DNA of 64,000 nucleotides from Octopus sinensis (Eukaryota), in assembly GCF_006345805.1 (NCBI RefSeq), contig NC_043003.1, positions 93,310,001-93,374,000 of the forward strand, given 5' to 3'. Below are positions 7,667 to 58,500 of the stretch, piece by piece. Each line of letters starts with the position of its first letter. The stretch's first letter is position 1. The notes under the pieces were generated by a model. That model made no database searches, was not told the DNA's origin, and was given only the letters and a program-made list of their open reading frames with translations. Made by a program: the position numbers and the translations under genes.

Positions 7667-10439
7667 GTGAGTTATAATGATGATACTGTTATTATGATGA
7701 TAGAGCATTGGCGTTATTAAAATAAAATCTGGCGATCCCAATCGCTTAGTAAATTAGAACTGTAGTTTGATGTGTTAAAACCACCACCACGTATGAAAAA
7801 CAATAAAATAACCGTTTATATAAACATTATTGATGTTAGATATAAATATAATTATAAATTACATTAAATATAGATATAAAAATAAAAAGAAACATTTATA
7901 CGTATGTATATGTGGCTTGTTAAATAAGTTAGTTTTCGATGTGTACGCACTTAGCTGAATAGTCTAGAAACCGAAGTTTGTGGACCCAGAGTTAGAAAGT
8001 GTACACAAAAAAATATTGCGAACACCTAAATGTAAGGAAAGATAGAAATGAAGAAATAAAATGCAGAATATATAAGGCCTTTTCATAACCGCAAAAATCA
8101 GTGTTTAAATGACAACTGATTCAGGTGTTTATTACACGTATAGCTAGTTGTTGTCGTGTACAAACTATGTCCCAACTTGTGTCGTAATTTTGTAAAAATT
8201 GCTAATTGTAATTATTTCGGTCGTTAATTATAAATGTTGAAGATGTATGATAAATTTCTATGGTAATTATAAGTTATTCATTTGTTTACCGCTGATATGA
8301 CCACCACCACCCATTTTTGTTAAACAGGAAAAGCTGATGCAAAGGAATTTTCATCTGTTAATTTAATAATTCTACACATTATTTATATTTGCGTAAGTTA
8401 CAAATACACGTCTATGTATGTGATGTGTGTATATATTATGCTTTACTAAACTAGGGGATTTGACTAAATCTTAAAATGTAGCTTTAAAGATTTTGATTCT
8501 TCATGTTATTACAAAATAACTTTCTAACATAGGTAGAAGCGCTAAATTTTGGAGTCAAAGGGACAGTCCTCTAGATCGATCTCAGTACTTGATTGGTGCG
8601 TTATTTTATCGATTAGGATGGGATGAACAACTAAGTTAACTAGAAATCACAAAAATGGATATTTAAGGATGACTCTGTTGAAAAGTTACGATATCAATTT
8701 AAAACATAGAATTTTATTCAGCTTAGTTTTATTTTGGAGTCGTGTCCTTACTGTAAACTATCACAAATTTTTGTGTATCTTTAATGCCTGTTACAACATT
8801 AAACTAACGGACATGGGCGATATGCTTGACACACAGTGGTCATTTAAGCATCAGTTTTAGCAGTTTTGAATAAGGTTTTATTTGTTCCGGTTTTGACTCC
8901 ACACTGATAATAAAGTCATAGTCTCAGGACAGGTTGTTAAATCACATGCCAAATAACTACACTCCAGGAATTTACAAAGATTGTAAGTTTCTCAAATTAA
9001 AATTTAAGCTGCCAAATGTAAGAAAAAACAATACCCTTCCTTCGTTATTATGATAACTGTTTTGATATATCTTGAGATTGTAAGTTCCTAAATTCTTCAT
9101 TTTATTATTTGATCTATTGGGAAAGTTGGCAAGATGGTAGAAGCATTAGCAAGTCAGACAAAATGTTTAATAGAATTTCTTCTGGCTTTTTACATTCTAG
9201 GTTCAAATTTCAGTTTTTGCTTTTTATCCTTTTGGGGGTCAATGAAATAAGTACGAGTAGTCAACTTACCCTATCCCTTAATATAGTCAACTTACCCTAT
9301 CCCTTAAAACTGCTGACATTGTACCATAATTTGAAACCCCTATTTCACCTACTGGTAAGTCTGTAGTGAAAATGTCAGATTTGGTAAAACAACAAACAAA
9401 ACACATAAAGAAATTTGTGTTTAGTTATAGGCCAATGATATTGATTTTGCCTTTTATCCTTTCTAGGATAAATAACCAGTCCAAGAACTGTTTCAACTGA
9501 ATTAACAATACTGTTTCACAAAAATGAGTGGTTTTGTGCTAATGTAAAAAGCCTATCTCTTGCTGAAACCCTTTTGGTTTTTTAGTTAAAACAATGAAAT
9601 GAAAAAAACTTTCATCCTTTAATTTTTTAAAAAGTGTATAGCAGTTTTATTTTCAGATATAGACTAACCAACTGTAAATATAACTTGATAGATAGTTGGA
9701 TAAATTGATATTTTGCTAGGTGAAGCGGTGACTATGTAACTAAATATATTGAATAATTGATTCTCAGTGAGCTAAAGGAAGAGGTTGATAGCTAGCTAGA
9801 TAAATAATACAAAAATGATGCATGAGGTAGAATAAATTATTTTGCTGTGGGCATATATTTCTCTTCTGCACTTTGTGGACTTTTTATACTTCAGTTTACC
9901 AACACAGATTATAGCTTCATCTTCATTCATAATTCACTGAAGGATTAATGCTGATGTAGGTAACCCCCTGGAAGACTGTTCTATTGAGACTGTTGCTCGC
10001 ACATTTATGTAACTATACTTACCATTTACAATATGGACTTAGGTTTTCAGTAATTCAATATTTCGTCTTTTATTATAAAATGTGAGGAGTTCAGGTAAAT
10101 ACTATGACAAACACTTTTTCATGTTGATGCCAGTTGTTAATCCAGTTGTTAATCTGACTGAACAGATGTTTAGTTAAAGCCATTCCAGCAATGGCTGTCA
10201 CATAATTTTTCAGATACTGTACCCCACTGCAGGCCATGTTACCCAATGTGCTCTTATTTTAAGATGGTAAAATGTAATCTGATGGATATTAGGTTGCTAT
10301 TTTAAGCAAGTTCAATGATCACATTGAGAGTTCCTTGATGGAGTGATTAACTTTTTGGATCTCAGAGGAGAAACTGGGAAACACAAAATCTGGCATCAGA
10401 TTTTGCAGGGGAAAATGCTCATCACTTTTTATTATCCTT

Positions 10440-10697
10440 TTTTCTTTTATCTTTTACTTGTTTTAGTCATTAGACTGTGGCCATGCTGGAGCACCACCTT
10501 GAATTTTTAACCAAATGAACCAGTACATTTTTTTAAAGCCTGGTACTTATTCTGTTGGCCTCTTTTGCTGAGTTGCTAAGTTATAGATCATACACACACT
10601 AACACCAGTTTCTAAGTGGTGGTGGTGGTGGGGGAGGGACAAACACAGACACAAAAACACACACACACACATCTATATCTGTCTGTCTGTCTATCTA

Positions 10698-10728
<31 letters not shown>

Positions 10729-11055
10729 GCCTGTCTGTCTGTATATCTATCTGTCTATATATCTGTCTGTCTGTCTGTCTATCTGTCTGTCTGTCTGTCT
10801 GTCTATCTGTCTGTCTGTCTATATATCTGTCTGTCTGTCTATATGTCTGTCTATGTATCTGTCTGTATATATAGCTATCTGTCTATCTATCTGTCTGTCT
10901 GTCTATCTATCTCTATCTATCTATCTGTTTCTCTGTCTGTCTGTCTACATATACATATACACAAGGGGCTTCTTTCAGTTTCTGTCTACCAAATCCACTC
11001 ACTAGGCTATGCTTAGCCCAAGGTTATAGTTGAAGACATTTGCCCAAGGTGCCAA
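10440..11055 (-). mobile_element. SINE family A with an expanded (TCTG/TCTA)n tract
   Basis: Reverse-complement family A ends flank the microsatellite at 10672-10960. Confidence 0.75.
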
Positions 11056-11319
11056 TTAAAAGTTTAAGTATTCTCAGCTATTTTCTTGCATAGAATTCTT
11101 ATAGGAGCCAGTGAAGAAGTTGATGTATTTGTTTAGCCTGCTCAGTCTCCTTCCACATAATTTCTTTTGCATTTCAAATGGAATTCCTGTGTTTCAACCA
11201 TAAATCTTATGACAACATATCTTAGAATATAAAATAGGATGGCCCATGATGTTCCTGTAAAAAAAATGTATTTAATTAAAAAATTTAAATTTCACAGAAA
11301 CTTGTTACATAAAACAATA

Positions 11320-11871
11320 TCTAGAAAGCTGTAATGCAAAAAAGTTGTTTGATTTCTTGGTTATTTGTCTCATTTTGGGATGTGAACGGTTTAAGGGGTG
11401 GTAGATGAGGTTGGATTGGCGCCAAAATTTACACTGGGGTGGGGGGTAATGGTGTGAGGAGGGCTGCAAGTTGCTTGGGGCTATCGTTTGGTTGCCATGG
11501 TGAGAAAAATTGAGTTTTATGGGATAGACAGGTTGCGCTGTTTGAATAATGGTGGCTTTTCGTGTTGCTGCAGGGGCTAGAGGCGGTTATCTTTAATTGT
11601 GGGTGTAAAAATTTGAGGGATTTTGGAAAGGGGTGGGGTGCATCAGCTATGGTGATGATGAGAAGGAGAAAAGAAAGAGTAGAAGAAGAGAAAGAAAAAA
11701 AAAGACGATAAAGACGAAGAAAAAGTAAAAAAATATGAAAAAGTAAAAGAAGAGGGCAATAAAAAGAACCAGGCAAAGAAGATGAACAAAAGAAGAAAGG
11801 GAAAAGGAGACAACATGCACAAAACAACACTACCACCAAAACCCGAGCGAAGCACGGGTCAAAATAGCTAG
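11320..11871 (+). mobile_element. Non-autonomous Helitron-like element (3' end supported, 5' end tentative)
   Basis: Hairpin ACCCG-AGCGAAGCA-CGGGT (11841-11859) followed by CTAG|T (11868-11872); possible A|TC start at 11319-11321. Confidence 0.5.
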
Positions 11872-14243: not shown

Positions 14244-17200
14244 CAATTTAAAAATAGGATAAAATCTTTATAAGAATTTATCAAGTAGTTAGTGTGAAAA
14301 ACCTCATAAGGGAAAAATTTATTAATTATTCCCTTTAAATATGTTTATTTATATTAAGGGCATTACTATACATAAATGCCTCACACTAGGAGGGACTCTT
14401 AAAGCCAAAACTACCATAATAAATACATTGTACCGAATGTGAGGGAAAGCAACTCATGAAGTAAGCTTTTTAAAAACAGATTCAGCTGCAGATCATATGA
14501 TTTCTTAATTAGTGCACAAAATGCACTTTTTAATCGTCAGTGCATGCATAATCAAGACACAAAAATGAACAAAAAAATCAACATACCAGACGAACACCAA
14601 ATGTAACCAGCATAGTACATAGAATTGTTCACACTTATATATCTGTTCATCTGGTATGTTGATTTTTTTGTTCATTTTTATGTGTCTTGATTATGCCTGC
14701 ATTGACGATTAAAAAGTGCATTTTGTGCACTAATTATGAAATCATGATCTGCAGCTGAATCTGTTTTTAAAAGGCTCACTTTGAGAGTTGCATTCCCTTG
14801 CGTTCAGTACAATGTGTTTATTATGGTAGTTTTGACTTTAAGAGTCCCTCCTAACTCGAGGAATATATGTATAGTAATGCCCTTAATATATACACATTAT
14901 ATATATGATGGACTCTCCTGTTGAAGTCAACATATGAGTGTTCAGCCTTTGCTGAACAACCTGCACAAATGATTTGTTTATAGTGATAAAATGTATGTGT
15001 TGTACATTAGCTCACTATCCCCATCAAATGGACGTTGACTGAACAGGTGCATGGTGTAACATGCTTCAAGAGTTGAAGTGATCGTAGAGCAGTGTGAGAT
15101 GAAGAGTTTTGTTCAAGAACACAATGTACCACCCAGTCTACGAATTGAAACTGTGATCTCACAATCATGAGTGCAACACCCTAACCACTAGACCATATAT
15201 ATATTAACCTTTAGCATTTAAACTAGCCATATCTGGCTCAAATATTCTATCTGTTTTATATTAAAACTAGCCAGATTCAGACTCTCACACCTACCCTACA
15301 ATGTCGTTCTAAAAATAAACTATCACATCAAAATCTTGCTGCTGCAAGATAAAGCATAATTAATTTAAAACATTATGAATAAATAAGCATTACATTTGAT
15401 AGAGTAAATTGAATGCTGAAGAGTTAAACTATATGAAAGTTGAACTTTCACATTTAACATTGATCTGAAAGGTTGTTTAGTGTTTTGGTTACATATATAG
15501 AAGTACATCTCAGAGAGAAAGATATGAAATTCCATATAGAACTAGGTTGGAGCTCTGACTACCTGAAAACATTATGGCATAGAGAAAACCAAGCAACTCA
15601 GGTGTGATAGAAGGTGCAGATGAGGGCAGCTGCATCAAACTCTCTCATGCACCAAATATCAATTGCTAAAAAGCATTCGTGAAGTAAAATCATGTAGCAA
15701 CACCGAATGGTGGTGCCCCAGCATGGCCACAGCTCTATTTGATTGTTGAGATACAACACTAATAAAACAGGTAGACTATTTGGGCCAGATATAACCAGTT
15801 TAATTGGTAAAAATGTTAAGTATATTATGTATAGTAACTATCATCTTTATTATATATATTAACTGCTATTAACTACTCTTCCAACTACAATTTTATAGTT
15901 ACTAAGTATAGTAACTGCTGTCTTTTACTAAGTCTATTTACTTATATGAAATGCTTACCCTATTATAACTGATGATGATTTTAATAAACAACTGTTGTTT
16001 TTATTAAGTATATATTAACTACCACCACAAAGACAAAAAAGGACTCCAAATTTGCCATCAAGATGTAGGACAAGATACTGCAATAGCCTGGGCTTCAGAA
16101 GTCCACAGCTCTTCAATATCCTCCCGAAGGACCTGAGATGGGGTGGATGCAGAGGTCTTTAAAATAAAGCTGGACCTTTTCCTGTCAGGTGTCCCAGATG
16201 AACCAACTTCACAGCAGGAGGTGCAGATGAGGGCAGCTGCATCAAACTCTCTCATGCACCAAATGTCATTTGCTAAAAAGCATTTGTGAAGTAAAATCAT
16301 GTAGCAACACCGAATGGCAGTGCCCCAGCATGGCCACAGCTTGTGAGCTGAAACTAGATGAAATGAAAAAATGAAAATGAACCCTATAGTTACTGCTGTC
16401 TTTATGATTTAACTACTGCTATAATGACAGCAGGTTCCCAGCCATAGTTAGTGCTGTTTTTAGTAAATATATTATGGACAACATCTGTTATGCATAAGAC
16501 TAAATAGTTTTATTGAATATACACATTTCTTCAAAATTTTAATTTTCTAAGACATTGTTGGAAACACAGTTGCATTAACATCATTATGTATTTGACTACA
16601 GTTTTGCAGAGGACAATTTTGGGTAAATTTGGAGTTAGATGATTCAAATTAACCTAATTTTATAATCAGTGCATTTATCTAATAAACTAGCTCAGGGTGA
16701 ATGTTATGAGTCATTGGATCATAGAGATACCATTGGAAGGACTGATCAAGTGATACTTTGATTGCAGATCTGTACTGCAAGCTAACTAAACCTTTGTTAT
16801 ATAGAGCCTTTACTGTCCACAGCATTCATATACATTTGTTCCATAATGCCTAATTAAGAGCTTGATAGATAAGGATTTGGTTGAAACTAAGATCTGGCAA
16901 TCTGGGATACTCTCAGTAAGGCCTACTGTAATCCTTAATAAAATAGTTCTATTACATTTTACACATGGAATTACCTAGGAAGGTAAAACAACTTCTTTGC
17001 ATGTTTTCCATTTGTATCACAGTTTTTAGAATAAGTACACACTCTTGCAAACTTACCCACCTGCTCTAGCTGATCCTCTGTCCCTTTTCCCTCTTATATT
17101 CACCTTCTTGTATCTTGAGGGTAACCCTGGCACTTTGTCACCTGGTTACCACCACCTTTTTCTCTCCTTCCACCTGCAACAGTCATGTACCTTTTCTATG

Positions 17201-33100: not shown

Positions 33101-36100
33101 GACTCTTAAGATGTTTCTCTGCCCTTTATACTTTACTCTTTCTGCATTGAGTCTTGAAGCATTACAGATCATCATCATCATCATTGTTTAACGTCCGTTT
33201 TTCATGCTAGCATGGGTTGGACGGTTCAACTGGGGTCTGGGAAGCCCGAAGGCTGCACCAGGCCAGTCAGATCTGGCAGTGTTTCTACAGCTGGATGCCC
33301 TTCCTAATGCCAACCACTCCGTGAGTGTAGAGGATGCTTTTTACGTGCCACCGACACAGGTGCCAGACAAGGCTGGCGAACGGCCATGCTCGGATGGAGC
33401 TTTTTATGTGCCACCGGCACGGAGGCCAGGCAAGGCTGGCAACGGCCACGATCGGATGGTGTTTGTTACGTGCCACCAGCACGGAGGCCATTCGATGCGG
33501 CGCTGGCTACGGCCACATTCGGATGGTTCTCTTATGTGCCACCAGCACTGGTATCACAACTACAAATTCCATCACTTTTCCAAAATGTTTCCAAATAACT
33601 TTTAAAAGATTGCTTTTACAGTTTGGTAAGATGAAGCAGCCTATATCACATTGTCCAGCAGCTGATTATGAAGAACTGCTGCCCCTTCTATTAACTCATT
33701 TTGATTCTTTAGAGACTAAAGGCACCTAATTTATCAGAAAATATCTGAAGATGATTTGAACCTACAACTCTGTTTACTGTATCACTGCATTAATTTCAAG
33801 CCAGTGGTTAACACAGTGGCATACTAAAAAAAATTAAAAATAGTTTTGTGGCCCTCATTTTCATCCTAACATTATTTGATGCTCCATCAAGGGTAAAGAC
33901 CCACTTTCGTCATGAATGACCATGAGATACACCTAGAAAGTTCCCCTCTGAGGCACATGTCTGGGCAAGATTGTTTATGGAAGACCAGCAGCTGCCCATG
34001 CATACCAGCCTCCCCTCTACATGCCACTGATGTTATCCAAGGTAAAGGCAAAGGCCGATACAGCTTGGCACCAGTAACATCACAACTCATTTCTATAGCT
34101 GAATGAACTGGAGCTACGTGATATAAAGTGTCTTGTTCAAGAACACAACACAGAGCCTGGTCTGAGAATTGAACTCACTACCTCATGATTGTGTGCCTGA
34201 CACTCTAACTACTGAGCCAGGTTCTGCACTGAATAATCACCACTTTGTAATTAAGATAAAATGATTGAAGAAGATGTAGAATAGTAGAACAGTACCTCTC
34301 TCATTGTTTTGCTATAACCAGTAAACTCACTGATACTGATCAAGTATCTCAGTTTGGCAGAGATAAGGCCTGGCAGGAGGTCATGGCTCATGAACCGCTG
34401 GAATTCTTTAATATCTTATTCATCTTCTGAGCTGCTTGCTCCATTGTGAAATTGCTAATGGCATTAAAAGCAGTGAGCTGGCATATATCACTTGTGGTAT
34501 TTGGGTGGCGAGCTGGCAGAAACGTTAGCATGCCGGGCGAAATGCGTAGCCGTACGTTCTGAGTTCAAATTCCGCCGAGGTCGACTTTGCCTTTCATCCT
34601 TTCGGGGTCGATTAAATAAGTACCAGTTACACACTGGAGTCGATACGATCGACTTAATCCATTTGTCTGTCCTTGTTTGTCCTCTCTGTGTTTAGCCCCT
34701 TGTGGGTAGTAAAGAAATAGGTATTTGTGTATCTAACATACCAAGTAATACTGAATATTTGCAAAGCAGTAGGATGTTAGAATAATGATAAATAGTAAAA
34801 TATAAGTGACATCTTCACTCCTCCCCCCTCCCCACTCTCTCTCCTAAATGCATTGATCTCCAAAATTTGAACTTACAGGGCCACACTCAATGTGATTTCA
34901 GATCACCTTACTTCATTCTTCTCAAAGTCACTCTAGAACTACTCCTATTCCCCTACTCTTAATTAATTAACTAAATACTGAACCGCTCTTATTGCAAATT
35001 AATCTATATTTGGTGTTTCGTTATGAGAACAAAACGAAATTTGCATGCATAATTATAAAAGATAAATAAGTCAATTTTTATTGAAAGGAACTTGACAAAA
35101 GATAGCTAATAATAGCTTGTCTTCATTGGCAGTTACCCCCCCCCCACACACACACACACTGTCTCTCTAGAAACTTAGAAATTAAGATTCAGCTATTATG
35201 CCTACACCTGCCTCTATTTCTGTCTCTGTTGCTGTTCTAATTATTAATTACTGTCTCACTTATGTATCTATCTATGTCTGTTTTCTGCTAATATACTTCT
35301 TTTGTTTAGCTAATGCATATCAGGGGTGGAGAAACCCCTGCCTGCAGGTGCAATTGCACCTGCAAGCCCATTTTATTTTGCTTGCAAGCCCACTTTATCA
35401 TGCCCACAGGTTGACATATTTGTATGTACAAAATATAGTAAATTTTGCAGTTATAAAATTTATACAATATTTGTATGCCTATTTGCGAAATAGGTTGCTT
35501 TTCTACTATGACTTATGATGGTTAGACTCGAACAGAAAATTGTCCAGTAATTGCCATTTGTATGGAACTTTAGTTTTCACTAGGTTTGTACCAACCCCTT
35601 GAGATCCAACTACACTCTAGCTGAAAAATAAAGAATACCTCATAAGTAATATAAACGTCCTAAATTCAGTGGCAGCATTAATGAAGATACTACGATCTTA
35701 ATTTAATCTGTTAAACTTATTTTTAATGTATATCAAATTATACATAGATATATGCAAGATTTACAGAGATTTACACAGAGTTAGATCTTGCGATCCAACT
35801 GCGAATCTTTTTCTTTGGAAATTTTTACCCGCTGCACTAAAATGTTTCCTCATCCCTGATCTATATACACTCTTTAATCTCTGATATATATATCATTTGA
35901 AACTATTTTGTTTACTGTTCCCATATTTATATATTTTGTTTACTCTTATATACCTGCATTTGATTACTTTGCAGGTCCATACCAGTAATACCACGAGGTC
36001 ATGCTCATTTAGCTCTTCTTGTTGGCGAGAATGGTTTGTATAAAACTTTAATTCCTTTGTAGTCATTCTCTAATCTTTTATTGCTGTTCTGTCTCCCTCT

Positions 36101-39100
36101 CTTTTATCTCTTTCTTTTGCATCTCTCTTATAATCTCTCCTTATTCTTCTGTTAATTCCTGGCACCTCTGTTTTATCTTCATGCACCCTTTATTTCTCAA
36201 TCATGCTTTATCCAACTCTTTTGACCTTCATGTTCATATTTTTCCATATTCAATCAATCATTATCCAAATAGCACAAAAAGGAATCGAAATAGTTACAAC
36301 AAGCTTGTTGTAACTTGTTGTAAAGCCTGTTTAATCCATACTCCTTGTTTACCTTAAGCACATTTCATTTATCTATCAATTCTTTATATATACTTATATG
36401 TTAAGTCATTTGAAGCACAAGCTTGAGACTGTACTAAGTCGCAGTGTCCCATCATCTGGAAAAGACTTTCTAACTAGAAAGGGTATGGCCTGGTCAGCCT
36501 GTAATGGCATGCATAAGATCTGGTCATCAAATCTAAGTAGAGACTTCAAACTTGAAATCTTCAAAGCCACAGTCGAACCAATTCTACTATATGGCTCAGA
36601 AACCTGGACGTTATCAAAGAAGCTTGAGAGGCGGTTGGATGGAACCTACACTCGCCTCCTTATGAGAGCTCAAAATCTCTCGTGGAGGCGCCATCCAACC
36701 AAAATGCAAATATATGGGAAACTACCACCTGTGTCATCTCTTGTGAAAGGTAGGAGAGTCCAGTTTGCTGGACATTGTTGTAGAGCTGAAAACGAGGTAA
36801 TTTCTACTCTTCTCCTCTGGAAGCCATCTGCTCGTGATACCAGAGGGCGCACACTCACCTACACTGATGTAATCTCCAGGGATACAGGCATCCAGCAACA
36901 GGACCTCCGTAATGCCATGATGGACCGTGAGGTCTGGCATAGTATGGTAAATTCCATTGTCTCGACCACGGTCAAACAATGATGATGATGATGTTCCATC
37001 ATCAGTGGAACCAAAAACTTCGAAGCCACTAAAAGAGAAAAAGAAGAAATCAAAGGACAGGCGAGAACAGCTTGACCAAATCAACCTTATCCTCCACCAT
37101 CATTATGATGCAGTCAGTACCACTGACTCTTCTATGCAAGAATTGGTATACTCAGTCATCAATGCCATCACAATAAGGGAAGCATTCAGCAAAGAAGAAA
37201 CTAAATTCTTGGATATGAGATGAAGCCAACAACAAATAGTAGAATAGAGCATTTGTTAAGAATACTATAGTCTCATCATCATTATCATCCACTTTCCATA
37301 TTTGCATGGGTTGGATGGTTTGACATGGAGCTGCCAGCTGGGAGCTGTCCAGACTCCAACTGTCTATTGTGGCATGGCTGGATGCCCTTCCTAATGCCAA
37401 CCACTTAACAGAGCGTGCTAGGTGTTTTTTTACATGCCACAAGCACGGCTGCTTTTTATGTGGCACCAGCACCTGAAAGGACAACCCTGTATGTGTGGAA
37501 GACAGTGGTTTTACTTAGCGTTACACATCTTACCAAGTATAGCAAATTGCCACATCCTGGTCTCTTTTCAGTTCCTCAGTGAGTCCCAGCGTCTGAAAAT
37601 CCTTTCTCAATACATTGTCCCATGTCTTTCTGTGTCTACCTCTTCCACGGGTACCATCCACAATTAGAGCTTGGCACTTCTTTATGCAGCTGTCCTCATC
37701 CATACACATCATATGACCAAACCAGCACAGTCTTCTCTCTTGCATACACATCTGATGCCTCTTATACCCAGTTTTCCTCTTAAATCATTTACACTTTGTT
37801 GCTCATGCACACTAACATTACCCATCCAGCATAGCATGCTAGCCTCATTTCTTTCAAGCCTTTGCTGTAGTTATAAAACTCTTTCCCTCGCTCTCTCTCA
37901 TAAAATTGCCTAATTGAAAATATTTGTATTTTAGGTTAATTATCTCTTATGGTTTGATACTTTTTCCTACTGGTAAACATTACACCATGAGCAGGAGTGG
38001 ATTTTATTGTTAGTTAGGCAATTTCGCTGACATGCACAATCTAATCAGCTGGTACTTAATCCATTTTCTTAAAGCATTAAGGGTTTCAACTACTAATGTT
38101 TCTGTAGGTAAGAAGCCCCTCTATTCCTGCTATGTTTATTACTCACAGGGTAGCTGAAAAGAACCATGAAAGTCATTGAAAATTTTCACACACTGCATGT
38201 ATACAATGGGCTTCTTTCAGTTTCAATCTATCATATCCACTCACAAGGCTTTCAGTTGACTATAGTAGAAAATTTATACCTGAGTTGCCATGCTGTTGGA
38301 CTAAACCAGGAACCATGTAGTTGACAAGTTCACTTATCACCCACACAGCCATGTATGTGTGTGCAGCACACACACATAAACGCACACACACAAACACACA
38401 CACAAACACACATTCAGTATCAAGTGTGTACTTTATGGGGTACTTCATAATTAGATTTAGTGATGTACTTTTCTTCAAAAGTACTCAGCAAATGTTTGTG
38501 TAAACTACAAATTATTCAAAGCTATGATTTTAAGTCTTTACAGTGAAGAAGATAAATAGAAAGAATCAATTTCTGATCCATCAAAAGGAAATATTCATAG
38601 TTTTATTATTTTATTAGTTTCAAGGTGGGTGAGCTGGCAGAATTGTGAGAGTGGTAGGTAGTCTTCTGGCTTTATATGTTTTCACCCATCTAACACCCGT
38701 GGACATATTTACAAAGTCAGAAAACAGCACAGCTCCCATGACTTTCGGAAACATTTTTTCACACTGAGAGTTGCTGAAGCATGGAACAAACTGCCGGCAT
38801 CAGTTGTTAGTTGTCGGAGCACTGCATCCTTCAAAACTTCCATGCTTTCTGAGATTCGCCAATACTACACCTGATTTTCTCCCCTCCATACACACACAAG
38901 CATGTATCTGACTCATACATTGTTCGCTTTCCAGACATTTGTACATTACTGTATATACTTCATATGCACTTTCTGACAAGTTGTGGTGCACCTGAGCACT
39001 GTATACAATAATTTCATTATTATTATTATTATAAATATTGCTAAGCTCAAGTTTGTCTTTCATCCTTCTGGGGCTAATAAAATACCAGTCATGTACAGGT

Positions 39101-40072: not shown

Positions 40073-43000
40073 TGCACGCAAACACATGCATGGTTATACC
40101 TCTACCTCAACATATCTACATATTCACTTTATATAGACATAGTTGTAGCACATATACTTCCCAGCACCTCATACACACGTATACAAATGTTTGCTCTCTT
40201 TGTGTCGCTTTCTGTATCTCTGACACACACACACATACCTATTTCATCCCAACTTTATACCCACATATATTTCCCATATTCACACACACTCATATTTTCA
40301 CACCTGCAAATACACTGACACAAAGCAAAGCCATTGCTATTATATAAATTGTGTTTTCTAGGTAACCAATCAAAAATTGTTATCTACAACAAAAGACACA
40401 ACTGTTATATGACACCATTACAATATTCATGAACAAACTTTAAAATGTAATCTTTCAGAAATTAGTCGAAATAACTAAAGGTATCCTAAATATAAAGAAT
40501 ATAAATGTAAATCGTGCCAACAAAAAATAAAATAAAAAACAAAACAAAGCAAACAAATATTGAAGTATTTGGACAAATTCAAAACTACTCGGTGAAGTAT
40601 GGTGAATAATGGACACAGAAAATGTTTTCTTAAAATATCAAATATTATTTATGTCAGTCAATCAATCAATCAATCAATCAGTCATCATCATTTAATGTCT
40701 GTTGTCCATGCTGGTATGGACATGTGTGTGTTTATGTGTGTGTGTGTCAACTATTGGTGTTGATATAAAATTGTAGTAGATAGTCTGAGCAACAGTGATG
40801 AATGTGTGTGTGTGCGTGCGTGCATACATGTATATGAACTTTGTGTGTGTGTGTATGTATATATATATATATATACTGAACCAATTGAATAAATAGACAT
40901 AATTGAATGCTTTTTGGCTGATGTCTGTTGATATATATATATATACATGTATATATATACATGTATATATATATACATCTATATTTATATATATATATAT
41001 ATACATGTATATTGATATATATTGATATAAGAATAGCCTGGGCAAAGTTTAGGGAGCTCTTACCTCTGCTGGTGACTAAAGGCCTCTCGCTCAGAGTAAA
41101 AGGCAGACTGTATGATGCGTGTGTACGAACAGCCATGCTACATGGCAGTGAAACATGGGCCGTGACTGCCGAGGACATGCGTAAGCTCGTGAGGAATGAA
41201 GCCAGTATGCTCCGATGGATGTGTAATGTCAGTGTACATACTCGACAGAGCGTTAGCACCTTGAGAGAAATGTTGTAGGGACGAGGTGGTGAAGCACGAC
41301 CTTCGAACTTTAGGCCTCACTGAGGAAATGACCAGCGACCGAGACCTTTGGAAATATTCTGTACGTGAGAAGACCCGGCAGGACAAGTGAGCCAGCCCAC
41401 TTATGAATGCCTTTCCTCCCTTGGACACAAAGACCTGTTGAGGCAAGCGAAGTCGATATAGAACCTCATCCGACGACAGGCACCATGCCAACCCCCTTGC
41501 TTGCGAAGACATGTTGGGGCAAGCGAAATCGAATTGAACCAGCCAGGATCCCTGGTCTGGTGGTACGTAAAAAGCACTATCCGACTCGTGGCGATGCCAG
41601 CGCCGCCTCCACTGGCTTCCGGCCGGTGGCACGTAAAATACCCCAATCTGACTGTACGACAGGCACCCATGCCAACCCCCTTGCTTGCGAAGACTTGTTG
41701 GGGCAAGCGAAATCGAATTGAACCAGCCAGGATCCCTGGTCTGGTGGTACGTAAAAAGCACTATCCGACTCGTGGCCGATTGCCTCCACTGGCTTCCGTG
41801 CGGTGGCACGTAAAATACACCAATCTGACCGTACGACAGGCACCCATGCCAACCCCCTTGCTTGCGAAGACATGTTGGGGCAAGCGAAAACGAAATCGAA
41901 ATCGAATTGAACCAGCCAGGATCCCTGGTCTGGTGGTACGTAAAAAGCACTATCCGACTCCTGGCCGATGCCAACGCCGCCTCCACTGGCTTCCGTGCCG
42001 GTGGCACGTAAAATACACCAATCTGACCGTACGACAGGCACCCATGCCAACCCCCTTGCTTGCGAAGACATGTTGGGGCAAGCGAAATCGAAATCGAATT
42101 GAACCAGCCAGGATCCCTGGTCTGGTGGTACGTAAAAAGCACTATCCGACTCGTGGCCGATGCCAGCACCCCCTCGTTTGGCTTCCGTGCAGGTGGCACA
42201 TAAAATACACCAATCCGACCGTGGCCGTTGCCAGCCTCGCCTGGCACCTGTGCAGGTGGCACGTAAAAAGCACCCACTACACTCACGGAGTGGTTGGCAT
42301 TAGGAAGGGCATCCAGCTGTAGAAACACTGCCAGATAAGACTGGAGCCTGGTGCAGCCTTCTGGCTTTCCAGATCCCCGGTCGAACCGTCCAACCCATGC
42401 TAGCATGGAGAACGGACGTTAAACGATGATGATGATGATGATGATACATGTATATGTATGCATATATATATACATGTATATGTATATATATATACATGTA
42501 TATGTATGTATATGTATATATATATATACATGTATATGTATGTATATATATATACATGTATATGTATGTATATGTATGTATATGTACATGTATATGTATG
42601 TATATGTATATATATATATATACATGTATATGTATGTATATGTATATATATATACATGTATGTATATGTATGTATATGTATATATATATACATGTATGTA
42701 TATGTATGTATATGTATATATATATACATGTATGTATATGTATGTATATGTATATATATATACATGTATGTATATGTATGTATGTATATATATACATGTG
42801 TATGTATGTATATATATATATATACATGTGTATGTATATATATATATACATGTATATGTATGTATATATATATATACATGTATATGTATGTATGTATATA
42901 TATATACATGTATATGTATGTATGTATATATATACATGTATATGTATGTATGTATATATATATACATGTATATGTATGTATGTATATAACCTTAGTTTGA

Positions 43001-46000
43001 TATACATGTATATATATACATACATATAGGAGTATATATATACATACATATACATGTATGTATATATATATATACATATATATATACATATACATGTATA
43101 TATATATACATATATAGGCGCAGGAGTGGCTGTGTGGTAAGTAGCTTGCTAACCAACCACATGGTTCCGGGTTCAGTCCCACTGCGTGGCATCTTGGGCA
43201 AGTGTCTTCTGCTATAGCCCCAGGCCGACCAATGCCTTGTGAGTGGATTTGGTAGACGGAAACTGAAAGAAGCCTGTCGTATATATGTATATATATATGT
43301 GTGTGTTTGTATGTGTTTGTGTTTGTCCCCCTAGCATTGCCTGACAACCGATGCTGGTGTGTTTACGTCCCCGTTACTTAGCGGTTCGGCAAAAGAGACC
43401 GATAGAATAAGTACTGGGCTTACAAAGAATAAGTCCCGGAATCGATTTGCTCGACTAAAGGCGGTGCTTCAGCATGGCCGCAGTCAAATGACTGAAACAA
43501 GTAAAAGAGTAAAAGAGAGTAAGAGTATATATATATACATATACATATACAAGAGAGCAACTAATTTTGATAAACGCATTTTGGTTTGGCATAAGAAATA
43601 TAAATCTGTTGAAGATGTCCCCGAATACATTTCAATATCAGTGATCAACAAAGCCAAAGACTTGAGCCGTGTCTATGTCAGCCTCTGCATGGTTGCTGTC
43701 ACCATTGTCCTTTGCATCATTGTGATGTACAGCGGGAGACAGGCTGCAAAACGGGGTGAAGGAGTGTCAAAGACCAACATGGAGTGGCACCGCCAATATA
43801 ATCAACAAAAGAATGGAGATGACACCAAGAACTAAGACATATTGCTTCTTCCTCTTCTTCTCTCTCTCTCTCTCTCTCTCTCTCATACACACAGACTCTG
43901 CACACAGTTTCATGTAGAGGCATGTATACACAAACAAGCACATGCCCTTACACATACACATTAACACCTACACACTCACATAAACCACCCCATGACAATC
44001 AATATGGACTAACACACCCACACCCACAAATACGTGCACACACACGCATGCACGCACGTGCATACTTAATCATGCAAACACATTTTCATTCTTGTTCCCC
44101 AAAAAACCCTGCATATATACACCTAAACCGTGTGCTCCTTCTTTCTCCCACCACACACACATACATGCACACACACACAAAGGCAGTGTCCCATACACAT
44201 ATATATATATATCACATGATCATGTGATTGAGCAGACTGTTGAACGCTGTTATACATCGCTAGTCACAATGCACTTTGCATCGTTTTAGCTTTCTAACGA
44301 GGCCACCCTACTGACTAAGTCAGCAGGCCAAAATACATACATATACATATATATATATATATATATATACATACACACACATACATACATACATATACAT
44401 ACATACAGGATGAGCCAAAAGTCATGCACAAAATTCAATATGTTCTAGAATTGTCCATAACATGTTTCAGTTTTTCTAAAATTGAATAAAACAATATTGA
44501 ACACATACGTACTTGTACACGTTGAACAAAATGAATAATAATAATAACAATAACAATAATAATAATAATAACTACACTCACGGAGTGGTTGGCGTTAGGA
44601 AGGGCATCCAGCTGTAGAAACACTGCCAGATCAGACTGGAGCCTGGTGCAGCCTTCTGGCTTCCCAGACCCCGGTCGAACCGTCCAACCCATGCCAGCAT
44701 GGAAAGCGGACGTTAAACGATGATGATGATGATGATGATATATACATACATATACATCATCATCATCATTTAACGTCCGTTTTCCACGCTACCATGGGTT
44801 GGACGGTTCGACCGGGATCTGGAAGCCATGGAGGCTGCACCGTCCAACCCATGGTAGCGTGGAAAACGGACGTTAAATGATGATGATGATGTATATGTAT
44901 GTATATATATATACATGTATATGTATATATATATACATGTATATGTATATATATATACATGTATATGTATATATATATACTTGTATATGTATGTATATAT
45001 ATATACATGTATATCAAACTAAGGTTACAGAACAAACAAATGCAAGGTCATCCACATAACATTTCATATCTCGAACATTTAATCATAGAATATACATTTA
45101 TGACATCACGGAAGATGAAACATAACTCATCTGTACAAGCATATAAGAAAGTGTGAGAAAAATGTGTGAATACTAGTGATTAATCACGGTTAATGTTAAT
45201 ACTTTAGCGATTAAGAAATATATATTTTTTAAAAAACATTACAGCACCTAGAAAATAGATACGTAAAAATATAGTATAAAGTAATATATAAATATATAGG
45301 TATATAAAAATATATAAAAAATATATATATATATATAGAGGCGCAATGGCCCAGTGGTTAGGGCAGCGGACTTGCGGTCGTAGAATCTCGGTTTCGATTC
45401 CCAGACCGGGCGTTGTGTGTGTTTATTGAGCGAAAACACCTAAAAGCTCCACGAGGCTCCGGCAGGGGATGGTGGTGATCCCTGCTGTACTCTTTCACCA
45501 CTCTAAAGGCGGTGCTCCAGCATGGCCGCAGTCAAATGACTGAAACAAGTACAAAAAAAAAAAAAAAAAAAATATATATAGAAAGCGTATAAATAAGTAA
45601 TATATAATGTAAAAATAAAAGTTCATCGTTTAGAAAATCTTTTAAAAATTACTTTTCAAATAAAGGAAACCTATAGTTAAAAACCAGTGTCCAAGCAAAA
45701 AAAAAGAAACCATATGGGAGATGTAAATATGGTTTCTTCTTTTTTGCTTGGACACTGGTTTTTAACTATAGGTTTCCTTTATTTGAAAAGTAATTTTTAA
45801 AAGATTTTCTAAACGATGAACTTTTATTTTTACACTACTGCCTCCAGGTACTTGATGTAGGCCTCTGCGTTGAGTGAGGTTGTGTGGGAAGATGAAAGGA
45901 GGTATAATGTCGACATCACTAGTAATCACTCCAACTACCATGATGTTGACTGGATGCTTGATTTTTATCACTCTCAGTACATGTTTTGCGGACATTGCAA

Positions 46001-48407: not shown

Positions 48408-49691
48408 ATGTAGTTTTGTGTTTGCCCCCCAAAAACCATTGCTTGACAACCGATGTTGGTGTGTTTATGTCCCTGAAACTTAGCAGTTCAGCAAAAGAGA
48501 CTGATAGAATAACTACTAGGCTTACAAAGAATAAGTTCTGGGGTTGATTTCTTTGACTAAAAGTGGTGCTCCAGCATGGCTGCAGTCAAATGGCTGAAAT
48601 GTGTAAAAGACTAAAAAAGTATACACACACGCACACATATATATATATACACACAGACATTAATGTGTCTTTCTATGATTTACTTGCAGAATACAATTTT
48701 TCTCATCGAATTGACCATTTTTCATTTGGAGAAATTGGTGCCAGATTTGTTCACCCTCTTGATGGAGAAGTAATGATCACAAAACAAAGTAAGATTCCAA
48801 TTATGTCTTTTAATTTCATTTATATATATATATATTATTTATGAGCGTCTAATTTATATATTTCTTGTGCACATCCTGATGTTCGTTTTTCTTCTTTTTT
48901 TTTCAATTGTTTGTTTATTAGAATTAACTATATACATATCTATGTATGTATATATGCATGTGTATAACGGGAAGGTTTACGAAAATAAGCAAAAGACGAA
49001 GGCAGGTGGAGTACAAACAAACAAATGTATTAGTATAGCGCTCAGGAATAGAAATAGAACTAGTCTTTTACATTTTGAGCCTATGCTCTTCGACAGAAAG
49101 ATACACAGGAAAAATCAAGGAGAGAAAAAAATGCGTATAGGAGCTAACGATTTATCATGGCGTCCTGACTTCGGACAGTGGTCAGGGGAGATAACAGGGT
49201 CAAGTGACTTCCAAATGCATGTATATATGTGTGTATGTTTTATAGATATATACACGGGCTTATGTGGTTAAGAAGTTTGTTTCAAAACTACTTTATTTTA
49301 GGGGTTTGGTCCTACTGTGTGGCAATTATCTTCTGTTATAGCCTTGAGTTGTGTAGCACCTTTTCAGTGAAAACTGATTGGTAGAAACTATAAGGAAGCT
49401 CACTATGTTTGTGTGTGTATGCATGCATGCATGTTTGGGCAGTGAAGCTGATGCTTGTTTCCATAAACAAAATGTCTGGCAGTAGTTTAACATGTAAAAA
49501 TTTGGAATAAAACTACCTTACTTGGAAAGCAAGTAAAAGGTTAGCATCAAGAAGGGCTTTCAAATATGGTAGTTTATTCCATGTTTTTACCTGTAAAACT
49601 ACTGCTAGATATAAAAATGGTGATGACATGGCATCCCTCCTAACACTGAATCTGATATATTATCCATGATATATGTAAAAATGATATTTCC

Positions 49692-55545: not shown

Positions 55546-58500
55546 GTGGTTAGGGCAGCATACTCGTGGTCGTAGGATTACAGTTTCGATTCCCAGACCG
55601 GGCGTTGTGAGTGTTTAATGAGCGAAAACACCTAAAGCTCCACGAGGCTCCGGCAGGGGGGGGGGGGCGATCCCTGCTGTACTCTTTCGCCACAACTTTC
55701 TCTCACTCTTTCTTCTGTCGGCCTGCTCGCTTAGCCAGTGGGGTGGCGTCATTTGAAGGCTAAAACAATGCGAAGCGCATTGTGACCAGCGATGTGTAGC
55801 AACATCTGATAGCCTGGTTGGTCACGGTGATCACGGTGATATATATATATATATCATCATCATCATCATCAATGTCCGTCTTCCATGCTAGCATGGCTGG
55901 CATGGGGGTGGGTGAGCACATGGCTTACTGGTTAGGATGTTATACTTATGATTGTGAAATTGTGGTTTTGATTTCCAGACCAGGTTTGCATTGTGTTCTT
56001 GAGCAAAACACTTCATTTCATGTTTCTCTGCAACTGTTACATCATGTGACATGTGGCACTTGGTAATGTGGATTTGATGGAGGCATTGAGCTTATGTGAA
56101 CATAAATTATAAAAAAATCACTACAAGTAGTTCATCTTTATGGTTTTTCAGCAAGAAATGACAGAGTTCAAGATATATTTCTTAACTTGATAATAGGTAT
56201 ATAATATGCTTTTTCTTTGGTGCCATTCTTTCAGAACCGAACCATTAATCATGAGAAAGGCAGCCATGGAGTCGCTGGAATCTTCATTAAATATGACATT
56301 GCTTCTTTAAAAATCCGTGTACGAGAAGAACACAGACCTTATTGGCAATTCTTAGTCCGGCTTTGTGGTATCATTGGTGGAATGTTTTCTGTATCAGGTA
56401 AAACTTTTCATGGAATTTATTTTATGTTTTTCAGTTGTAACTGCTATAGCACATCAATGCCATGCTGACTCCTTTGTTAATGGTGAAAGTTTATGTAGGT
56501 TTGATATATTTATTACTGTTTAGATTCTGCAAAGCTTGGTTATGTGGTTCAGAAGTTTGCTTTGCAACCATGTAGTTTCAAGTTTGATTTCACTGTACAG
56601 AATACTGGGCAGACGTATCATCCTGGTCCTGGTTTAGTGGAATTTTTTATGTTCCACCTAAAGAGACAAATAGGGCTGGAGAGGAGGTGCCCGAGTAAGA
56701 AAGTGTTTGATGAAAGATGGAAGAAGGTCATGTATAAAAGGTCTCTCGTGGATGCGAGATAAGCCCAAAAACCGAGGTCAGTGAGAGGCGGGGTTCGTGG
56801 GGTCCATAAACCCGCCCCACTCCATTTGTTTAAAAAATGTCCATTGTGTTGTTTATTCATTCATTTTATATAAAATCATGTTGAATTTTTATCGACCCCA
56901 AATTGCACTTTATATGTAAAATCATCCGTGATTGTATTGCCCATTCTATGTATGTCCTTATGGATAATAAAAAAATCAAGGTTTCCATACAGAGTCTGTC
57001 GACCAAATTTCATGCATACTGCATTGGTCAGTCTCAGGATAAATAGAATTCTACTATCACTTTAGATTGATTAATACTTCATGAATGAAATTTTGTAGAA
57101 GGAATCTACAGAGGCCCCTCATAAATATATATATATCTGTGTGTATGGCTGTATGTAATTATGTATGTCTGTCTGTGTGTGTGTGTAATCTATCTAATCT
57201 GTCTGTCTATTCATCCATTTATTTATTTAATTACCTTTACAAGGAAAAGGTTGATAGTAATTTCAAAAATTTTGGCTTGCTTGCCTTCATCAGACTGTCA
57301 GCCTTTCCTTGTAAAAGTTAATAAATATGTATTCTACTAAAAAGTATTCAGTAATCCTTCAGTTTAATGTTAAATTTTTATATACAACTTGATATAAAAG
57401 CAAACATCTATATACATACATACATATATATATATATATTATTAGCATTTCCAATTATAGAGAGCCTGTCTTCATTGAAGGGTGCACTTATGTAAGCTTT
57501 AGAACAATGATTCCCAACATGGTGCATATGCCCCACCAGTGGGGTGTGGGATCCCCAATTTTTTTTTTAATGGGACATGGAATTGTGAAAATATTTTCTT
57601 TTCTTAGTCAATAATTTTTTTCTTAGGCATCAGATGTGGTGTGCAAGAGAGACAACAGCACTGGGATGGTTATGTGATTGTTATGGATGAGGACAGCTGT
57701 GTAAAGAAGTGCTGATCTCTAACTGTGTAGGGAACATGTGGTAGAGGTAGACCTAGAAAGACATGGAACAAGGTGGTGAAGCATGATCTTTGAACTTTAG
57801 GCCTCACAGAGGTGATAGCTAGAGACTGAGACCTTTGGCAATATGCTGTGCTTGAAGACCCGCCAAGTCAAGTGAAATTGTAGTCGTGGCTGATGCTGAT
57901 GTCATGTAACTGGTACCTATGCTGGTAGCATGTAAAATGCACCTTTCAAGCATTGGGCCTCACGGAGGCAAAGTGGCCGATGCCAGTGGCATGTGAAAAG
58001 TACCTTTTGAGTGTTGGGCCTCATGGAGGCAATGATGAATGACTGAGATCTTTGGCAACATGCTGTGCTGGAGAAGAAGACCCATCAAGTGAAATTGCAG
58101 TCATTGTAGATACTGGTATCATGCAAATGGCACCCAAACCAGGGGCACATAAAGGCACCCATTACACTCTTGGAATGGTTGGCATTAGGAAGGGCATCTT
58201 GCTGTTGAAACCATGCCAAATCAGAGTGGAGTCTGCAACATTAGCCCTGGTCAAACTGTCCAACCCATGCCAGCATGGACAACAGACGTTAAATGATGAT
58301 GGGGATGAATCATGTACTTTCTTTGTACTCAGTACTTAAAAGAGTTACCAGTAGATACTTTTGTATTAGATATTTATGATAAAATATTAAAAATAAAGTT
58401 GTCTTTTTCCAAACACTAGTAATGCATACATTTTTCTGGAAAGTTATAGTGGGGCCTGGGAGAAAATATGTTGCAAAATATTGCTTTAGAACTTGAGAAA

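What the first reader, a model, noticed from the sequence alone, without database searches (positions are those of the whole stretch)
43554..43835. Intact FAM162 (DUF1075) C-terminal frame nested in ERGIC2 intron 6, fused in frame to a SINE
Seen: 93 uninterrupted codons of FAM162-like sequence on the same strand as the host gene, with no introns, no N-terminal part, no poly(A) and no good polypyrimidine acceptor. The frame stays open upstream through a (TA)n tract into the SINE tail, which supplies an in-frame ATG ([12 protein letters not shown]...). Splicing ERGIC2 exon 6 (phase 1) to the AG at 43556-43557 would give an in-frame ERGIC2-FAM162 chimera, but that acceptor is weak. Known, from recall and not checked here: FAM162A is a mitochondrial protein and the human gene has introns within this stretch. 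Inferred: a young 5'-truncated retrocopy, a captured exon, a SINE-started chimeric ORF, or a misplaced assembly piece.
Basis: partly seen in the sequence, partly recalled or inferred. Interest (0 to 1): 0.75.

Follow-up and report, generated by a model that had tools for sequence, protein, structure and literature searches.

The report
Truncated FAM162 retrocopy in octopus ERGIC2 intron
This is a recently inserted copy, made from mRNA and missing its front end, of the octopus FAM162-like mitochondrial gene; it sits in an intron of ERGIC2, is almost certainly a dead pseudogene, and is ordinary except that it ends in a LINE-type tail instead of poly(A).

Summary
Window 43551-43835 (+) is an open 94-codon frame plus stop that matches Pfam DUF1075/FAM162 (96 bits). 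It lies in intron 6 of ERGIC2, on the same strand. The window is Octopus sinensis chromosome CM016865.1.

The piece is a processed, 5'-truncated retrocopy. The intron-containing parent gene (three coding exons, another chromosome) has an intron at codon 80/81. The window copy reads straight across that point. It starts 17 nt inside parental exon 2 and carries about 735 nt of parental 3'UTR, up to 44570.

It has no poly(A). It ends in the last ~170 nt of a dispersed LINE-type repeat with a (GAT)n tail (44571-44741). Three full-length intronless copies elsewhere in O. sinensis and O. vulgaris have the same mRNA|tail junction. So this is one member of a small family of tailed retrocopies.

The copy is absent from ERGIC2 intron 6 of O. 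vulgaris. It has only six private substitutions (0.6%), so an intact frame is expected by chance (P about 0.55 or more). The in-frame SINE ATG and the in-frame splice option are coincidences: the acceptor is poor and no gene model exists.

Verdict: ordinary young retropseudogene; low interest.

The parts
43551..43835 (+). FAM162-like (DUF1075, 'UPF0389 protein CG9231-like') coding remnant: codons 53-146 of the 146-aa family protein plus the TAA stop. It contains the transmembrane stretch [20 protein letters not shown].
   Evidence: Pfam 96.3 bits. 93/94 residues identical to the O. sinensis parent protein P0002. It crosses the parental exon 2/exon 3 junction at 43633|43634 with no intron.
43836..44570 (+). 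Retroposed 3'UTR of the parent mRNA, including the AATAAA at 44485 and a terminal (AAT)n run.
   Evidence: blastn to parent L001 19472-20393 gives 93.4% identity counting gaps and 3.7-3.8% substitutions.
44571..44741 (+). Last ~170 nt of a dispersed LINE-type repeat, ending in (GAT)n and fused to the 3'UTR. It stands where a poly(A) tail would be.
   Evidence: The same junction (AAT)nAA|CTACACTCACGG is present in L002, L003 and L004 and absent from the parents. 62 such tails occur in ~290 kb. Only the four FAM162 copies start at this position.
43526..43550 (.). TA/TACA microsatellite at the 5' truncation point. It may be one arm of a target-site duplication, with 44742-44758 as the other arm.
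   Evidence: Read directly: ATATACATATACATATAC against ATATACATACATATACA. Both are low-complexity, so the duplication is not proven.
43102..43525 (+). Abundant SINE with box A/B-like motifs in its head. Its conserved 3' end supplies the in-frame ATG at 43488.
   Evidence: 43 related copies in the window and fetched loci. The tail consensus ...GTCAAATGACTGAAACAAGTAAAAGAGTAAAAGA is seen in about 24 copies.
35975..36033 (+). ERGIC2 coding exon 6 ([19 protein letters not shown]), ending in phase 1.
   Evidence: Pfam COPIIcoated_ERV on the joined exons.
48690..48788 (+). ERGIC2 coding exon 7 ([15 protein letters not shown]...).
44755..44892 (.). Head-to-head pair of LINE-tail pieces just 3' of the insertion: an inverted arm (44755-44838) joined to a direct 3' piece (44839-44892). 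The direct piece is orthologous to a single intact tail in O. vulgaris.
   Evidence: The diagnostic variants 'cctccatg' and 'catggtagcgtggaaaac' are shared with L005 37205-37392.

Best explanation
A transcript of the octopus FAM162-like gene, already fused at its 3' end to the last ~170 nt of a LINE-type element with a (GAT)n tail, was reverse-transcribed by a non-LTR retrotransposon enzyme. The copy was inserted into an AT-rich microsatellite patch in ERGIC2 intron 6 in the O. sinensis lineage.

Reverse transcription stopped early, or the 5' part was lost at integration. The copy therefore begins at codon 53 and has no start codon, no mitochondrial presequence and no promoter of its own. It is transcribed only passively, as part of the ERGIC2 pre-mRNA intron, and is a non-functional processed pseudogene. 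Its frame is still open because too little time has passed to break it.

Shown: identity as FAM162/DUF1075; processed structure; 5' truncation inside exon 2; the shared chimeric tail; absence from the O. vulgaris orthologous intron; low private divergence.

Inferred: the LINE-mediated mechanism; that the tail is what makes this mRNA a retrotransposition substrate; lack of function.
For: Identity:
- Pfam DUF1075 at 96 bits.
- 93/94 residues identical to O. sinensis 'UPF0389 protein CG9231-like'.

Processed origin:
- The parent L001 has exons at ..10139, 14765-14864 and 19471-.., and the O. bimaculoides (L008) and O. vulgaris (L010) parents have the same structure.
- Window 43551-43633 matches exon 2 from its 18th base. 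Window 43635-44570 matches exon 3 plus the 3'UTR. No intron lies between them.

Family and mechanism:
- Three full-length intronless copies (L002, L003, L004) share the identical 3'UTR|tail junction.
- Their flanks are unrelated and AT-rich. Together with the window copy, the four copies have three different 5' ends, which points to separate retrotransposition events.
- The tail is the 3' end of a LINE-like unit: an RT C-terminal fragment, then 192-bp repeats, then the tail, at window 41030-42445.
- Active RTE LINEs are reported in Octopus (PMC9115989).
- LINEs that recognise their own 3' end restrict which RNAs can be copied (PMC5470649).

Age:
- Six private substitutions in 972 sites (five, where a realigned microsatellite site drops out).
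- ERGIC2 intron divergence between O. sinensis and O. vulgaris is 2.5%.
- There is no trace of the copy in O. vulgaris ERGIC2.
- The same microsatellite patch holds a different, O. vulgaris-specific 3.6 kb LINE, so it is an insertion hotspot.

No function:
- P(frame intact | neutral) is about 0.55 or more.
- dN/dS has no power: 1 synonymous and 1 non-synonymous difference from the parent.
- No gene model exists.
- The candidate acceptors are poor.
Against: - Target-site duplications cannot be shown convincingly, because both flanks are TA/TACA microsatellite.
- The source locus carrying the tail was not found. The intron-containing genes of O. sinensis and O. vulgaris both lack it.
- Substitution patterns conflict with a single simple history (notebook 'unexplained').
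- Three to nine sites are derived in both species' parents but not in the window copy. The copy's sequence lineage may therefore be older than the species split, although the insertion is absent from O. vulgaris. This needs an unsampled source, ancestral polymorphism, or loss in O. vulgaris.
- The O. bimaculoides intron has a 2.7 kb N gap, so absence there is not shown.
- No expression data or read-level data were available.
Confidence: 0.85

Rival explanations
1. Exonised alternative terminal exon. ERGIC2 exon 6 splices to the AG at 43556-43557 and the transcript ends at the retrocopy's own AATAAA. The product would be an ERGIC2(1-215)-FAM162(55-146) chimeric membrane protein of the jingwei or TRIM5-CypA type.
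For: - The copy is on the same strand as the host.
- Exon 6 ends in phase 1, and splicing to the exon start at 43558 restores the codon GCA and the FAM162 frame.
- A sense AATAAA lies at 44485.
- Such chimeras are a known class (PMC5470649).
Against: - Three AGs sit within 6 nt. The first two (exon starts 43554 and 43556) give out-of-frame reads that stop after 3 and about 29 codons.
- The in-frame AG has G at -3 and 40% pyrimidines upstream. The nine real ERGIC2 acceptors have 60-100% pyrimidines (mean 0.81), and every one has C or T at -3.
- All three RefSeq ERGIC2 accessions of O. sinensis encode the same 431-aa protein.
- The search of 5.8 billion proteins with the 93-aa piece returned no chimeric protein.
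Confidence: 0.04
2. A new SINE-started small gene. The 115-codon ORF from the SINE ATG at 43488 ([27 protein letters not shown]...) is translated into a tail-anchored-like FAM162 fragment.
For: The frame is open from 43335 and has an ATG at 43488. The transmembrane segment is retained.
Against: - The ATG is part of the SINE family's conserved tail, which occurs many times in the window and fetched loci, so the fusion is accidental.
- No promoter evidence was found.
- No gene with this product is on record.
- There is no conservation to test, because the copy is species-specific.
- The mitochondrial presequence is missing.
Confidence: 0.03
3. Assembly artefact. The retrocopy is real sequence, but the long-read assembly joined it into ERGIC2 intron 6 wrongly through the abundant LINE-tail and microsatellite repeats.
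For: - The copy is bounded by repeats on both sides.
- A short head-to-head inverted junction of LINE tails lies 14 nt downstream (44755-44892).
- The whole 41.0-44.8 kb block does not align with O. vulgaris.
- The only O. sinensis assembly available is the one the window comes from.
Against: - The window has no N gaps.
- Sequence on both sides returns to collinearity with O. vulgaris.
- The O. vulgaris ortholog has its own lineage-specific LINE in the same patch, so real insertional turnover here is expected.
- The copy has its own private variants and a unique 5' truncation, so it is a distinct locus somewhere in the genome.
Confidence: 0.06
4. DNA-level (segmental) duplication of part of another retrocopy locus, rather than an independent retrotransposition event.
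For: The tailed source was not found. An unsampled copy could share flanks with this one.
Against: Homology to all three sampled copies begins exactly at codon 53 and ends in the (GAT)n tail, which is the natural 3' end of a retroposed unit. No flanking sequence is shared.
Confidence: 0.03

Closest known systems
Processed pseudogenes / 5'-truncated gene retrocopies made by non-LTR retrotransposon machinery
   Same: The copy is intronless although the parent has introns. It includes the 3'UTR, is 5'-truncated, sits on a different chromosome from the parent, inserted at an AT-rich site, and is lineage-specific.
   Different: There is no poly(A) tail; the 3' end is a LINE-type tail with (GAT)n. 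Target-site duplication is not demonstrable in the microsatellite context.
Template-switch chimeric retrocopies (cellular RNA fused to a LINE/SINE 3' part; Buzdin/Gogvadze type, PMC2104539)
   Same: The 5' part is a cellular mRNA copy and the 3' part is the 3' end of a retroelement. Both are in the same orientation and are joined directly.
   Different: Here the same junction occurs in at least four dispersed copies. The chimera, or a tailed source gene, was copied repeatedly rather than once. Whether the junction arose by template switching or by a LINE fragment inserting at the gene's 3' end is not resolved.
SINE/LINE pairs with a common 3' tail ('stringent' LINEs such as CR1, L2 and RTE)
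   Same: A non-LINE RNA carrying the LINE's 3' tail is found in several retroposed copies. Microsatellite-type tails are typical of RTE-like elements.
   Different: The passenger is a Pol II protein-coding mRNA, not a Pol III SINE. The clade of the partner LINE was not determined here.
Intronic chimeric retrogenes (jingwei, TRIM5-CypA)
   Same: A retrocopy lies in sense orientation inside an intron of a host gene, and an in-frame splice is arithmetically possible.
   Different: The acceptor is poor, stronger out-of-frame AGs compete with it, and there is no annotated or predicted chimeric isoform.

Membership tests
FAM162 / UPF0389 (Pfam PF06388, DUF1075) | Significant match to the family profile above the curated cut-off | tested here: met
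   96.3 bits against a cut-off of 25, profile positions 67-150 of 158. 93/94 residues identical to the O. sinensis family member P0002.
FAM162 / UPF0389 (Pfam PF06388, DUF1075) | Complete protein with the N-terminal region (profile 1-66; residues 1-52 of the octopus proteins) | tested here: not met
   The N-terminal 52 residues have no match anywhere in the window. The piece is a gene fragment, not a family gene.
Processed retrocopy | Lacks introns that the parental gene has at the same positions | tested here: met
   The parental intron 2 position (L001 14864|19471) is crossed without interruption at window 43633|43634. The parents of three species share the intron.
Processed retrocopy | Poly(A) tail at the 3' end | tested here: not met
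   The 3'UTR ends in (AAT)n and is followed by a 170-nt LINE-type tail with (GAT)n.
Processed retrocopy | Target-site duplication flanking the insert | tested here: inconclusive
   ATATACATATACATATAC (43533-43550) resembles ATATACATACATATACA (44742-44758), but both are microsatellite sequence.
Processed retrocopy | Empty orthologous site in a related species | tested here: met
   There is no FAM162 sequence in the whole O. vulgaris ERGIC2 locus by tblastn or blastn. The breakpoints are blurred by other lineage-specific insertions. O. bimaculoides is uninformative because of an N gap.
Template-switch chimeric retrocopy | mRNA copy joined directly, in the same orientation, to the 3' terminal part of a LINE/SINE | tested here: met
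   Alignment A1. The tail start at query position 277 is unique to the FAM162 copies among 62 tails.
Template-switch chimeric retrocopy | Junction created during reverse transcription and not present in the source gene | tested here: inconclusive
   Both sampled parents lack the tail. However, four copies share one junction, so a tailed source locus probably exists and was not found.
Chimeric retrogene spliced to host exons | Usable in-frame splice acceptor | tested here: inconclusive
   The in-frame AG exists, but it is the third of three, has gAG at -3 and has 40% pyrimidines upstream.
Chimeric retrogene spliced to host exons | Chimeric transcript observed | not testable with these tools
   No RNA data were available. 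No chimeric protein appears in public annotation.

The most novel reading that the evidence does not exclude
The FAM162-like mRNA of the O. sinensis/O. vulgaris lineage acquired the 3' tail of a sequence-specific LINE. This made it a recurrent retrotransposition substrate, effectively a protein-coding 'SINE'. It has seeded at least four dispersed copies. Three of them keep complete open frames and are annotated as genes. The source would be a still-unsampled expressed locus with the native transcription start. The window copy would be a dead-on-arrival member of this active family.
Probability: 0.3. Interest if true: 0.45.

Novelty: new member of a known kind. Interest (0 to 1): 0.2.

Why it matters
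By itself this is an ordinary young retropseudogene in an intron. It should be masked or flagged so that gene predictors do not call a SINE-FAM162 or ERGIC2-FAM162 fusion.

It has modest wider value in two ways. First, it is a clean lineage-specific insertion marker separating O. sinensis from O. vulgaris. Second, the shared LINE-type tail on all four processed FAM162 copies is a small natural example of how mRNAs can be retroposed in a genome whose LINEs appear to need their own 3' tail. This bears on why cephalopod genomes hold few classical poly(A) retrocopies.

Tried and rejected
- Upstream FAM162 exons in the window. tblastn with the N-terminal 52 residues found nothing, so this is not a nested intact gene.
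- Segmental copy of the last exon. Rejected because the piece spans the exon 2/3 junction and starts 17 nt inside exon 2.
- Structured RNA or tRNA around the piece. ARAGORN found none. The only Rfam hits were miRNA-like matches inside microsatellites and hairpins, all far below gathering scores.
- A diverged copy of the LINE tail downstream of the parental 3'UTR. The alignment score is no better than shuffles, z = 1.
- The tail start as a natural boundary of the repeat, which would allow recurrent identical chimeras. Rejected: other tails start at many positions, and none starts at 277.
- Selection tests. The CDS is less diverged than the UTR between copy and parent (2/282 against 26/679, Fisher p = 0.006). 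The copy's private changes do not differ between the two regions (1/282 against 5/690, p = 0.68). Pairwise pN/pS ranges from 0 to 1.4 on a handful of substitutions. This gives no evidence of constraint on this copy.
- First ERGIC2 protein search with a 111-aa query. It returned only short fragments. A 330-aa query was needed to retrieve the octopus orthologues.

Full report
**What is there**

Window 43551-43835 (+) is an uninterrupted frame of 94 codons followed by TAA. The 93-aa translation matches Pfam PF06388 (DUF1075, the FAM162/UPF0389 family) at 96.3 bits, E 2e-27, over profile positions 67-150 of 158. A search of 5.8 billion proteins returned one 90% cluster: the 146-150-aa 'UPF0389 protein CG9231-like' proteins of Octopus sinensis, O. 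vulgaris and O. bimaculoides. The window piece is 93/94 identical to residues 53-146 of P0002. The first 52 residues have no counterpart anywhere in the 64 kb.

**Where the window is from, and the host gene**

Window 11463-60981 is 100% identical to O. sinensis GCA_006345805.1 chromosome CM016865.1. The copy therefore lies at about 93,353,551-93,354,741 of that record.

All ten coding exons of ERGIC2 (431 aa; Pfam ERGIC_N and COPIIcoated_ERV) lie on the + strand between 13463 and 58978. Exon 6 is 35975-36033 and ends in phase 1. Exon 7 is 48690-48788.

**It is a processed copy**

The protein P0002 is encoded on another chromosome (CM016879.1, locus L001) by a 9.7 kb gene. Its three coding exons end or begin at 10139, 14765-14864 and 19471. 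The O. bimaculoides (L008) and O. vulgaris (L010) genes have the same structure.

Window 43551-43633 aligns to exon 2 from its 18th base (98.8%). Window 43635-44570 aligns to exon 3 and about 735 nt of 3'UTR (93.4% with gaps; 3.7-3.8% substitutions). Nothing lies between the two blocks. The intron is missing, the 5' end falls inside an exon, and the 3'UTR came along. This is a 5'-truncated retrocopy, not a duplicated exon.

**The 3' end**

There is no poly(A). After a terminal (AAT)n the sequence continues as CTACACTCACGGAGTGG...ACGTTAAAC(GAT)n to 44741.

This is the last ~170 nt of a repeat with 62 tail-bearing copies in the ~290 kb examined. The longest local copy (window 41030-42445) runs from a reverse-transcriptase C-terminal fragment through 192-bp tandem repeats into the same tail. 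On that basis I read it as a LINE 3' end.

Three full-length intronless FAM162 copies have exactly the same 3'UTR|tail junction (alignment A1):
- L002: O. sinensis, antisense in a dynein heavy-chain intron.
- L003: O. vulgaris.
- L004: an unplaced O. sinensis scaffold.

No other tail copy starts at that position.

The copies' flanks are unrelated and AT-rich. Their 5' ends differ: L003 and L004 start at the same base in the parental 5'UTR, L002 starts 15 nt further in, and the window copy starts at codon 53.

The intron-containing genes of O. sinensis and O. vulgaris lack the tail, and their downstream sequence is not a diverged copy of it.

The simplest reading is that one chimeric FAM162-mRNA/LINE-tail source gave rise to several independent retrotranspositions, and the window copy is one of them. 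This fits three points from the literature:
- Template-switch chimeras are a known class (PMC2104539).
- LINEs that recognise their own 3' end restrict which RNAs they copy (PMC5470649).
- Active RTE LINEs are reported in Octopus (PMC9115989).

The mechanism itself is inferred, not shown.

**Age**

Neither tblastn nor sensitive blastn finds any part of the copy in the complete O. vulgaris ERGIC2 locus (L005).

The orthologous stretch is a TA/TATG microsatellite patch. In O. vulgaris it contains a 3.6 kb LINE of its own (endonuclease plus RT, minus strand). In O. sinensis it contains the LINE 3' fragment, the SINE and the retrocopy. The site is therefore an insertion hotspot, and the breakpoints cannot be drawn to the base.

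O. bimaculoides has a 2.7 kb N gap in this intron, so it is uninformative. The copy is in any case far closer to the O. sinensis parent than to the O. bimaculoides parent: 3.8% against 13% in the UTR.

The window copy has six private substitutions (five in the realignment). One is synonymous in the CDS (43634) and five are in the UTR, about 0.6% overall. ERGIC2 introns of O. sinensis and O. vulgaris differ by 2.5%.

One caveat. Three robust sites, and up to nine if microsatellite-adjacent sites are counted, are derived in both species' parental genes but not in the window copy. The copy's sequence lineage may therefore be older than the species split. An unsampled source, ancestral polymorphism, or loss in O. 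vulgaris would each explain this.

**Does the open frame mean anything?**

- Only 5.6% of possible substitutions in this frame create stops. With ~0.6% divergence, the chance of still being intact under neutrality is about 0.55 or higher.
- Against the parent there is one synonymous and one non-synonymous difference, and the non-synonymous one lies on the parental branch.
- The family-wide CDS is less variable than the UTR (6/282 against 45/690 columns, p = 0.004). pN/pS is not clearly below 1, and the UTR is full of microsatellites.
- There is no evidence of constraint on this copy.

**The SINE fusion and the splice idea**

The frame runs open from 43335 through the SINE's 3' end, and the ATG at 43488 lies inside the SINE family's conserved tail motif. 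This is an accident of adjacency. No gene with this product is on record, and no nested gene is called in the locus.

Exon 6 in phase 1 joined to the exon start at 43558 would indeed be in frame. However, that AG is the third of three in AAGAGAG. The first two give frames that stop almost at once. The in-frame site has G at -3 and 40% pyrimidines upstream. The nine real ERGIC2 acceptors have 60-100% pyrimidines, and every one has C or T at -3. All RefSeq ERGIC2 accessions encode the same 431-aa protein.

The sense AATAAA at 44485 could in principle cause some premature polyadenylation of ERGIC2 transcripts. I could not test this.

**Assembly**

The window has no gaps, and it returns to collinearity with O. 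vulgaris on both sides. Fourteen bases 3' of the copy there is a head-to-head junction of two LINE-tail pieces (44755-44838 inverted, 44839-44892 direct). O. vulgaris has one intact tail at that place. This may be a real fold-back rearrangement or a local assembly error. Only reads can tell. I give misplacement about 6%.

**Verdict**

This is a young, O. sinensis-lineage, 5'-truncated processed pseudogene of the FAM162-like gene. It belongs to a small family of retrocopies that end in a LINE-type tail instead of poly(A). The only mildly unusual feature is the shared tail and the unresolved identity of its source (notebook, 'unexplained').

Noticed in passing
L002:9973-11344; L003:~9958-11392; L004:~8479-9807: Three full-length intronless FAM162-like copies keep complete 146-codon frames and are annotated as protein-coding (P0003 in L002 and L003, P0001 in L004). 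L002 lies antisense inside a dynein heavy-chain gene. L002 (O. sinensis) and L003 (O. vulgaris) encode identical proteins, but their flanks do not align, so they are not orthologous insertions.
   Followed up: partly
window 44755-44892, compared with L005:37205-37392: Head-to-head inverted junction of two LINE-tail pieces where O. vulgaris has one intact tail. Both arms carry the locus-specific variants. This is either a fold-back rearrangement or a local assembly error.
   Followed up: partly
window 41030-42445: 5'-truncated LINE-like element, absent from O. vulgaris at this site. It consists of an RT C-terminal fragment (...[31 protein letters not shown]...), four copies of a 192-bp tandem repeat, then the same tail with (GAT)n.
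   Followed up: partly
L005:31758-35378: O. vulgaris-specific 3.6 kb LINE on the minus strand, with long endonuclease-like and RT open frames (348 and 487 aa). It is inserted in the same microsatellite patch of ERGIC2 intron 6.
   Followed up: partly
window 42444-43116, 44334-44400, 44898-45014: Long TA/TATG/TACA microsatellites give dozens of miRNA-like Rfam matches (mir-297, mir-466, mir-3149 and others). All are well below gathering scores and are artefacts of low-complexity hairpins.
   Followed up: yes
window 36335-36979: A 215-codon open stretch just downstream of ERGIC2 exon 6, with the motif pattern seen after LINE reverse-transcriptase domains ([25 protein letters not shown]...). It appears to be another non-LTR element fragment in intron 6.
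   Followed up: no
window 44199-44329 and 55720-55850 (minus): A 130-nt stretch of the retroposed 3'UTR is 76% similar to a sequence in a later ERGIC2 intron. The parental 3'UTR itself probably contains an old repeat fragment.
   Followed up: no
alignment of window, L001, L010, L002-L004 and L008; tail alignment A1: Characters conflict on the history of the tailed copies. Substitutions place them as successive offshoots of the parental lineage, with the window copy closest to the parents. Yet all share one junction that the parents lack. L002, L003 and L004 also share a 1-nt deletion and a CpG change in the tail that the window copy lacks.
   Followed up: partly
window 45340-45420: Start of another SINE with a tRNA-like head (GGCGCAATGGCCCAGTGGTTAGGGCAGCGGACTTGCGG...GGTTTCGATTCCCAGACC). 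It differs from the SINE at 43102.
   Followed up: no
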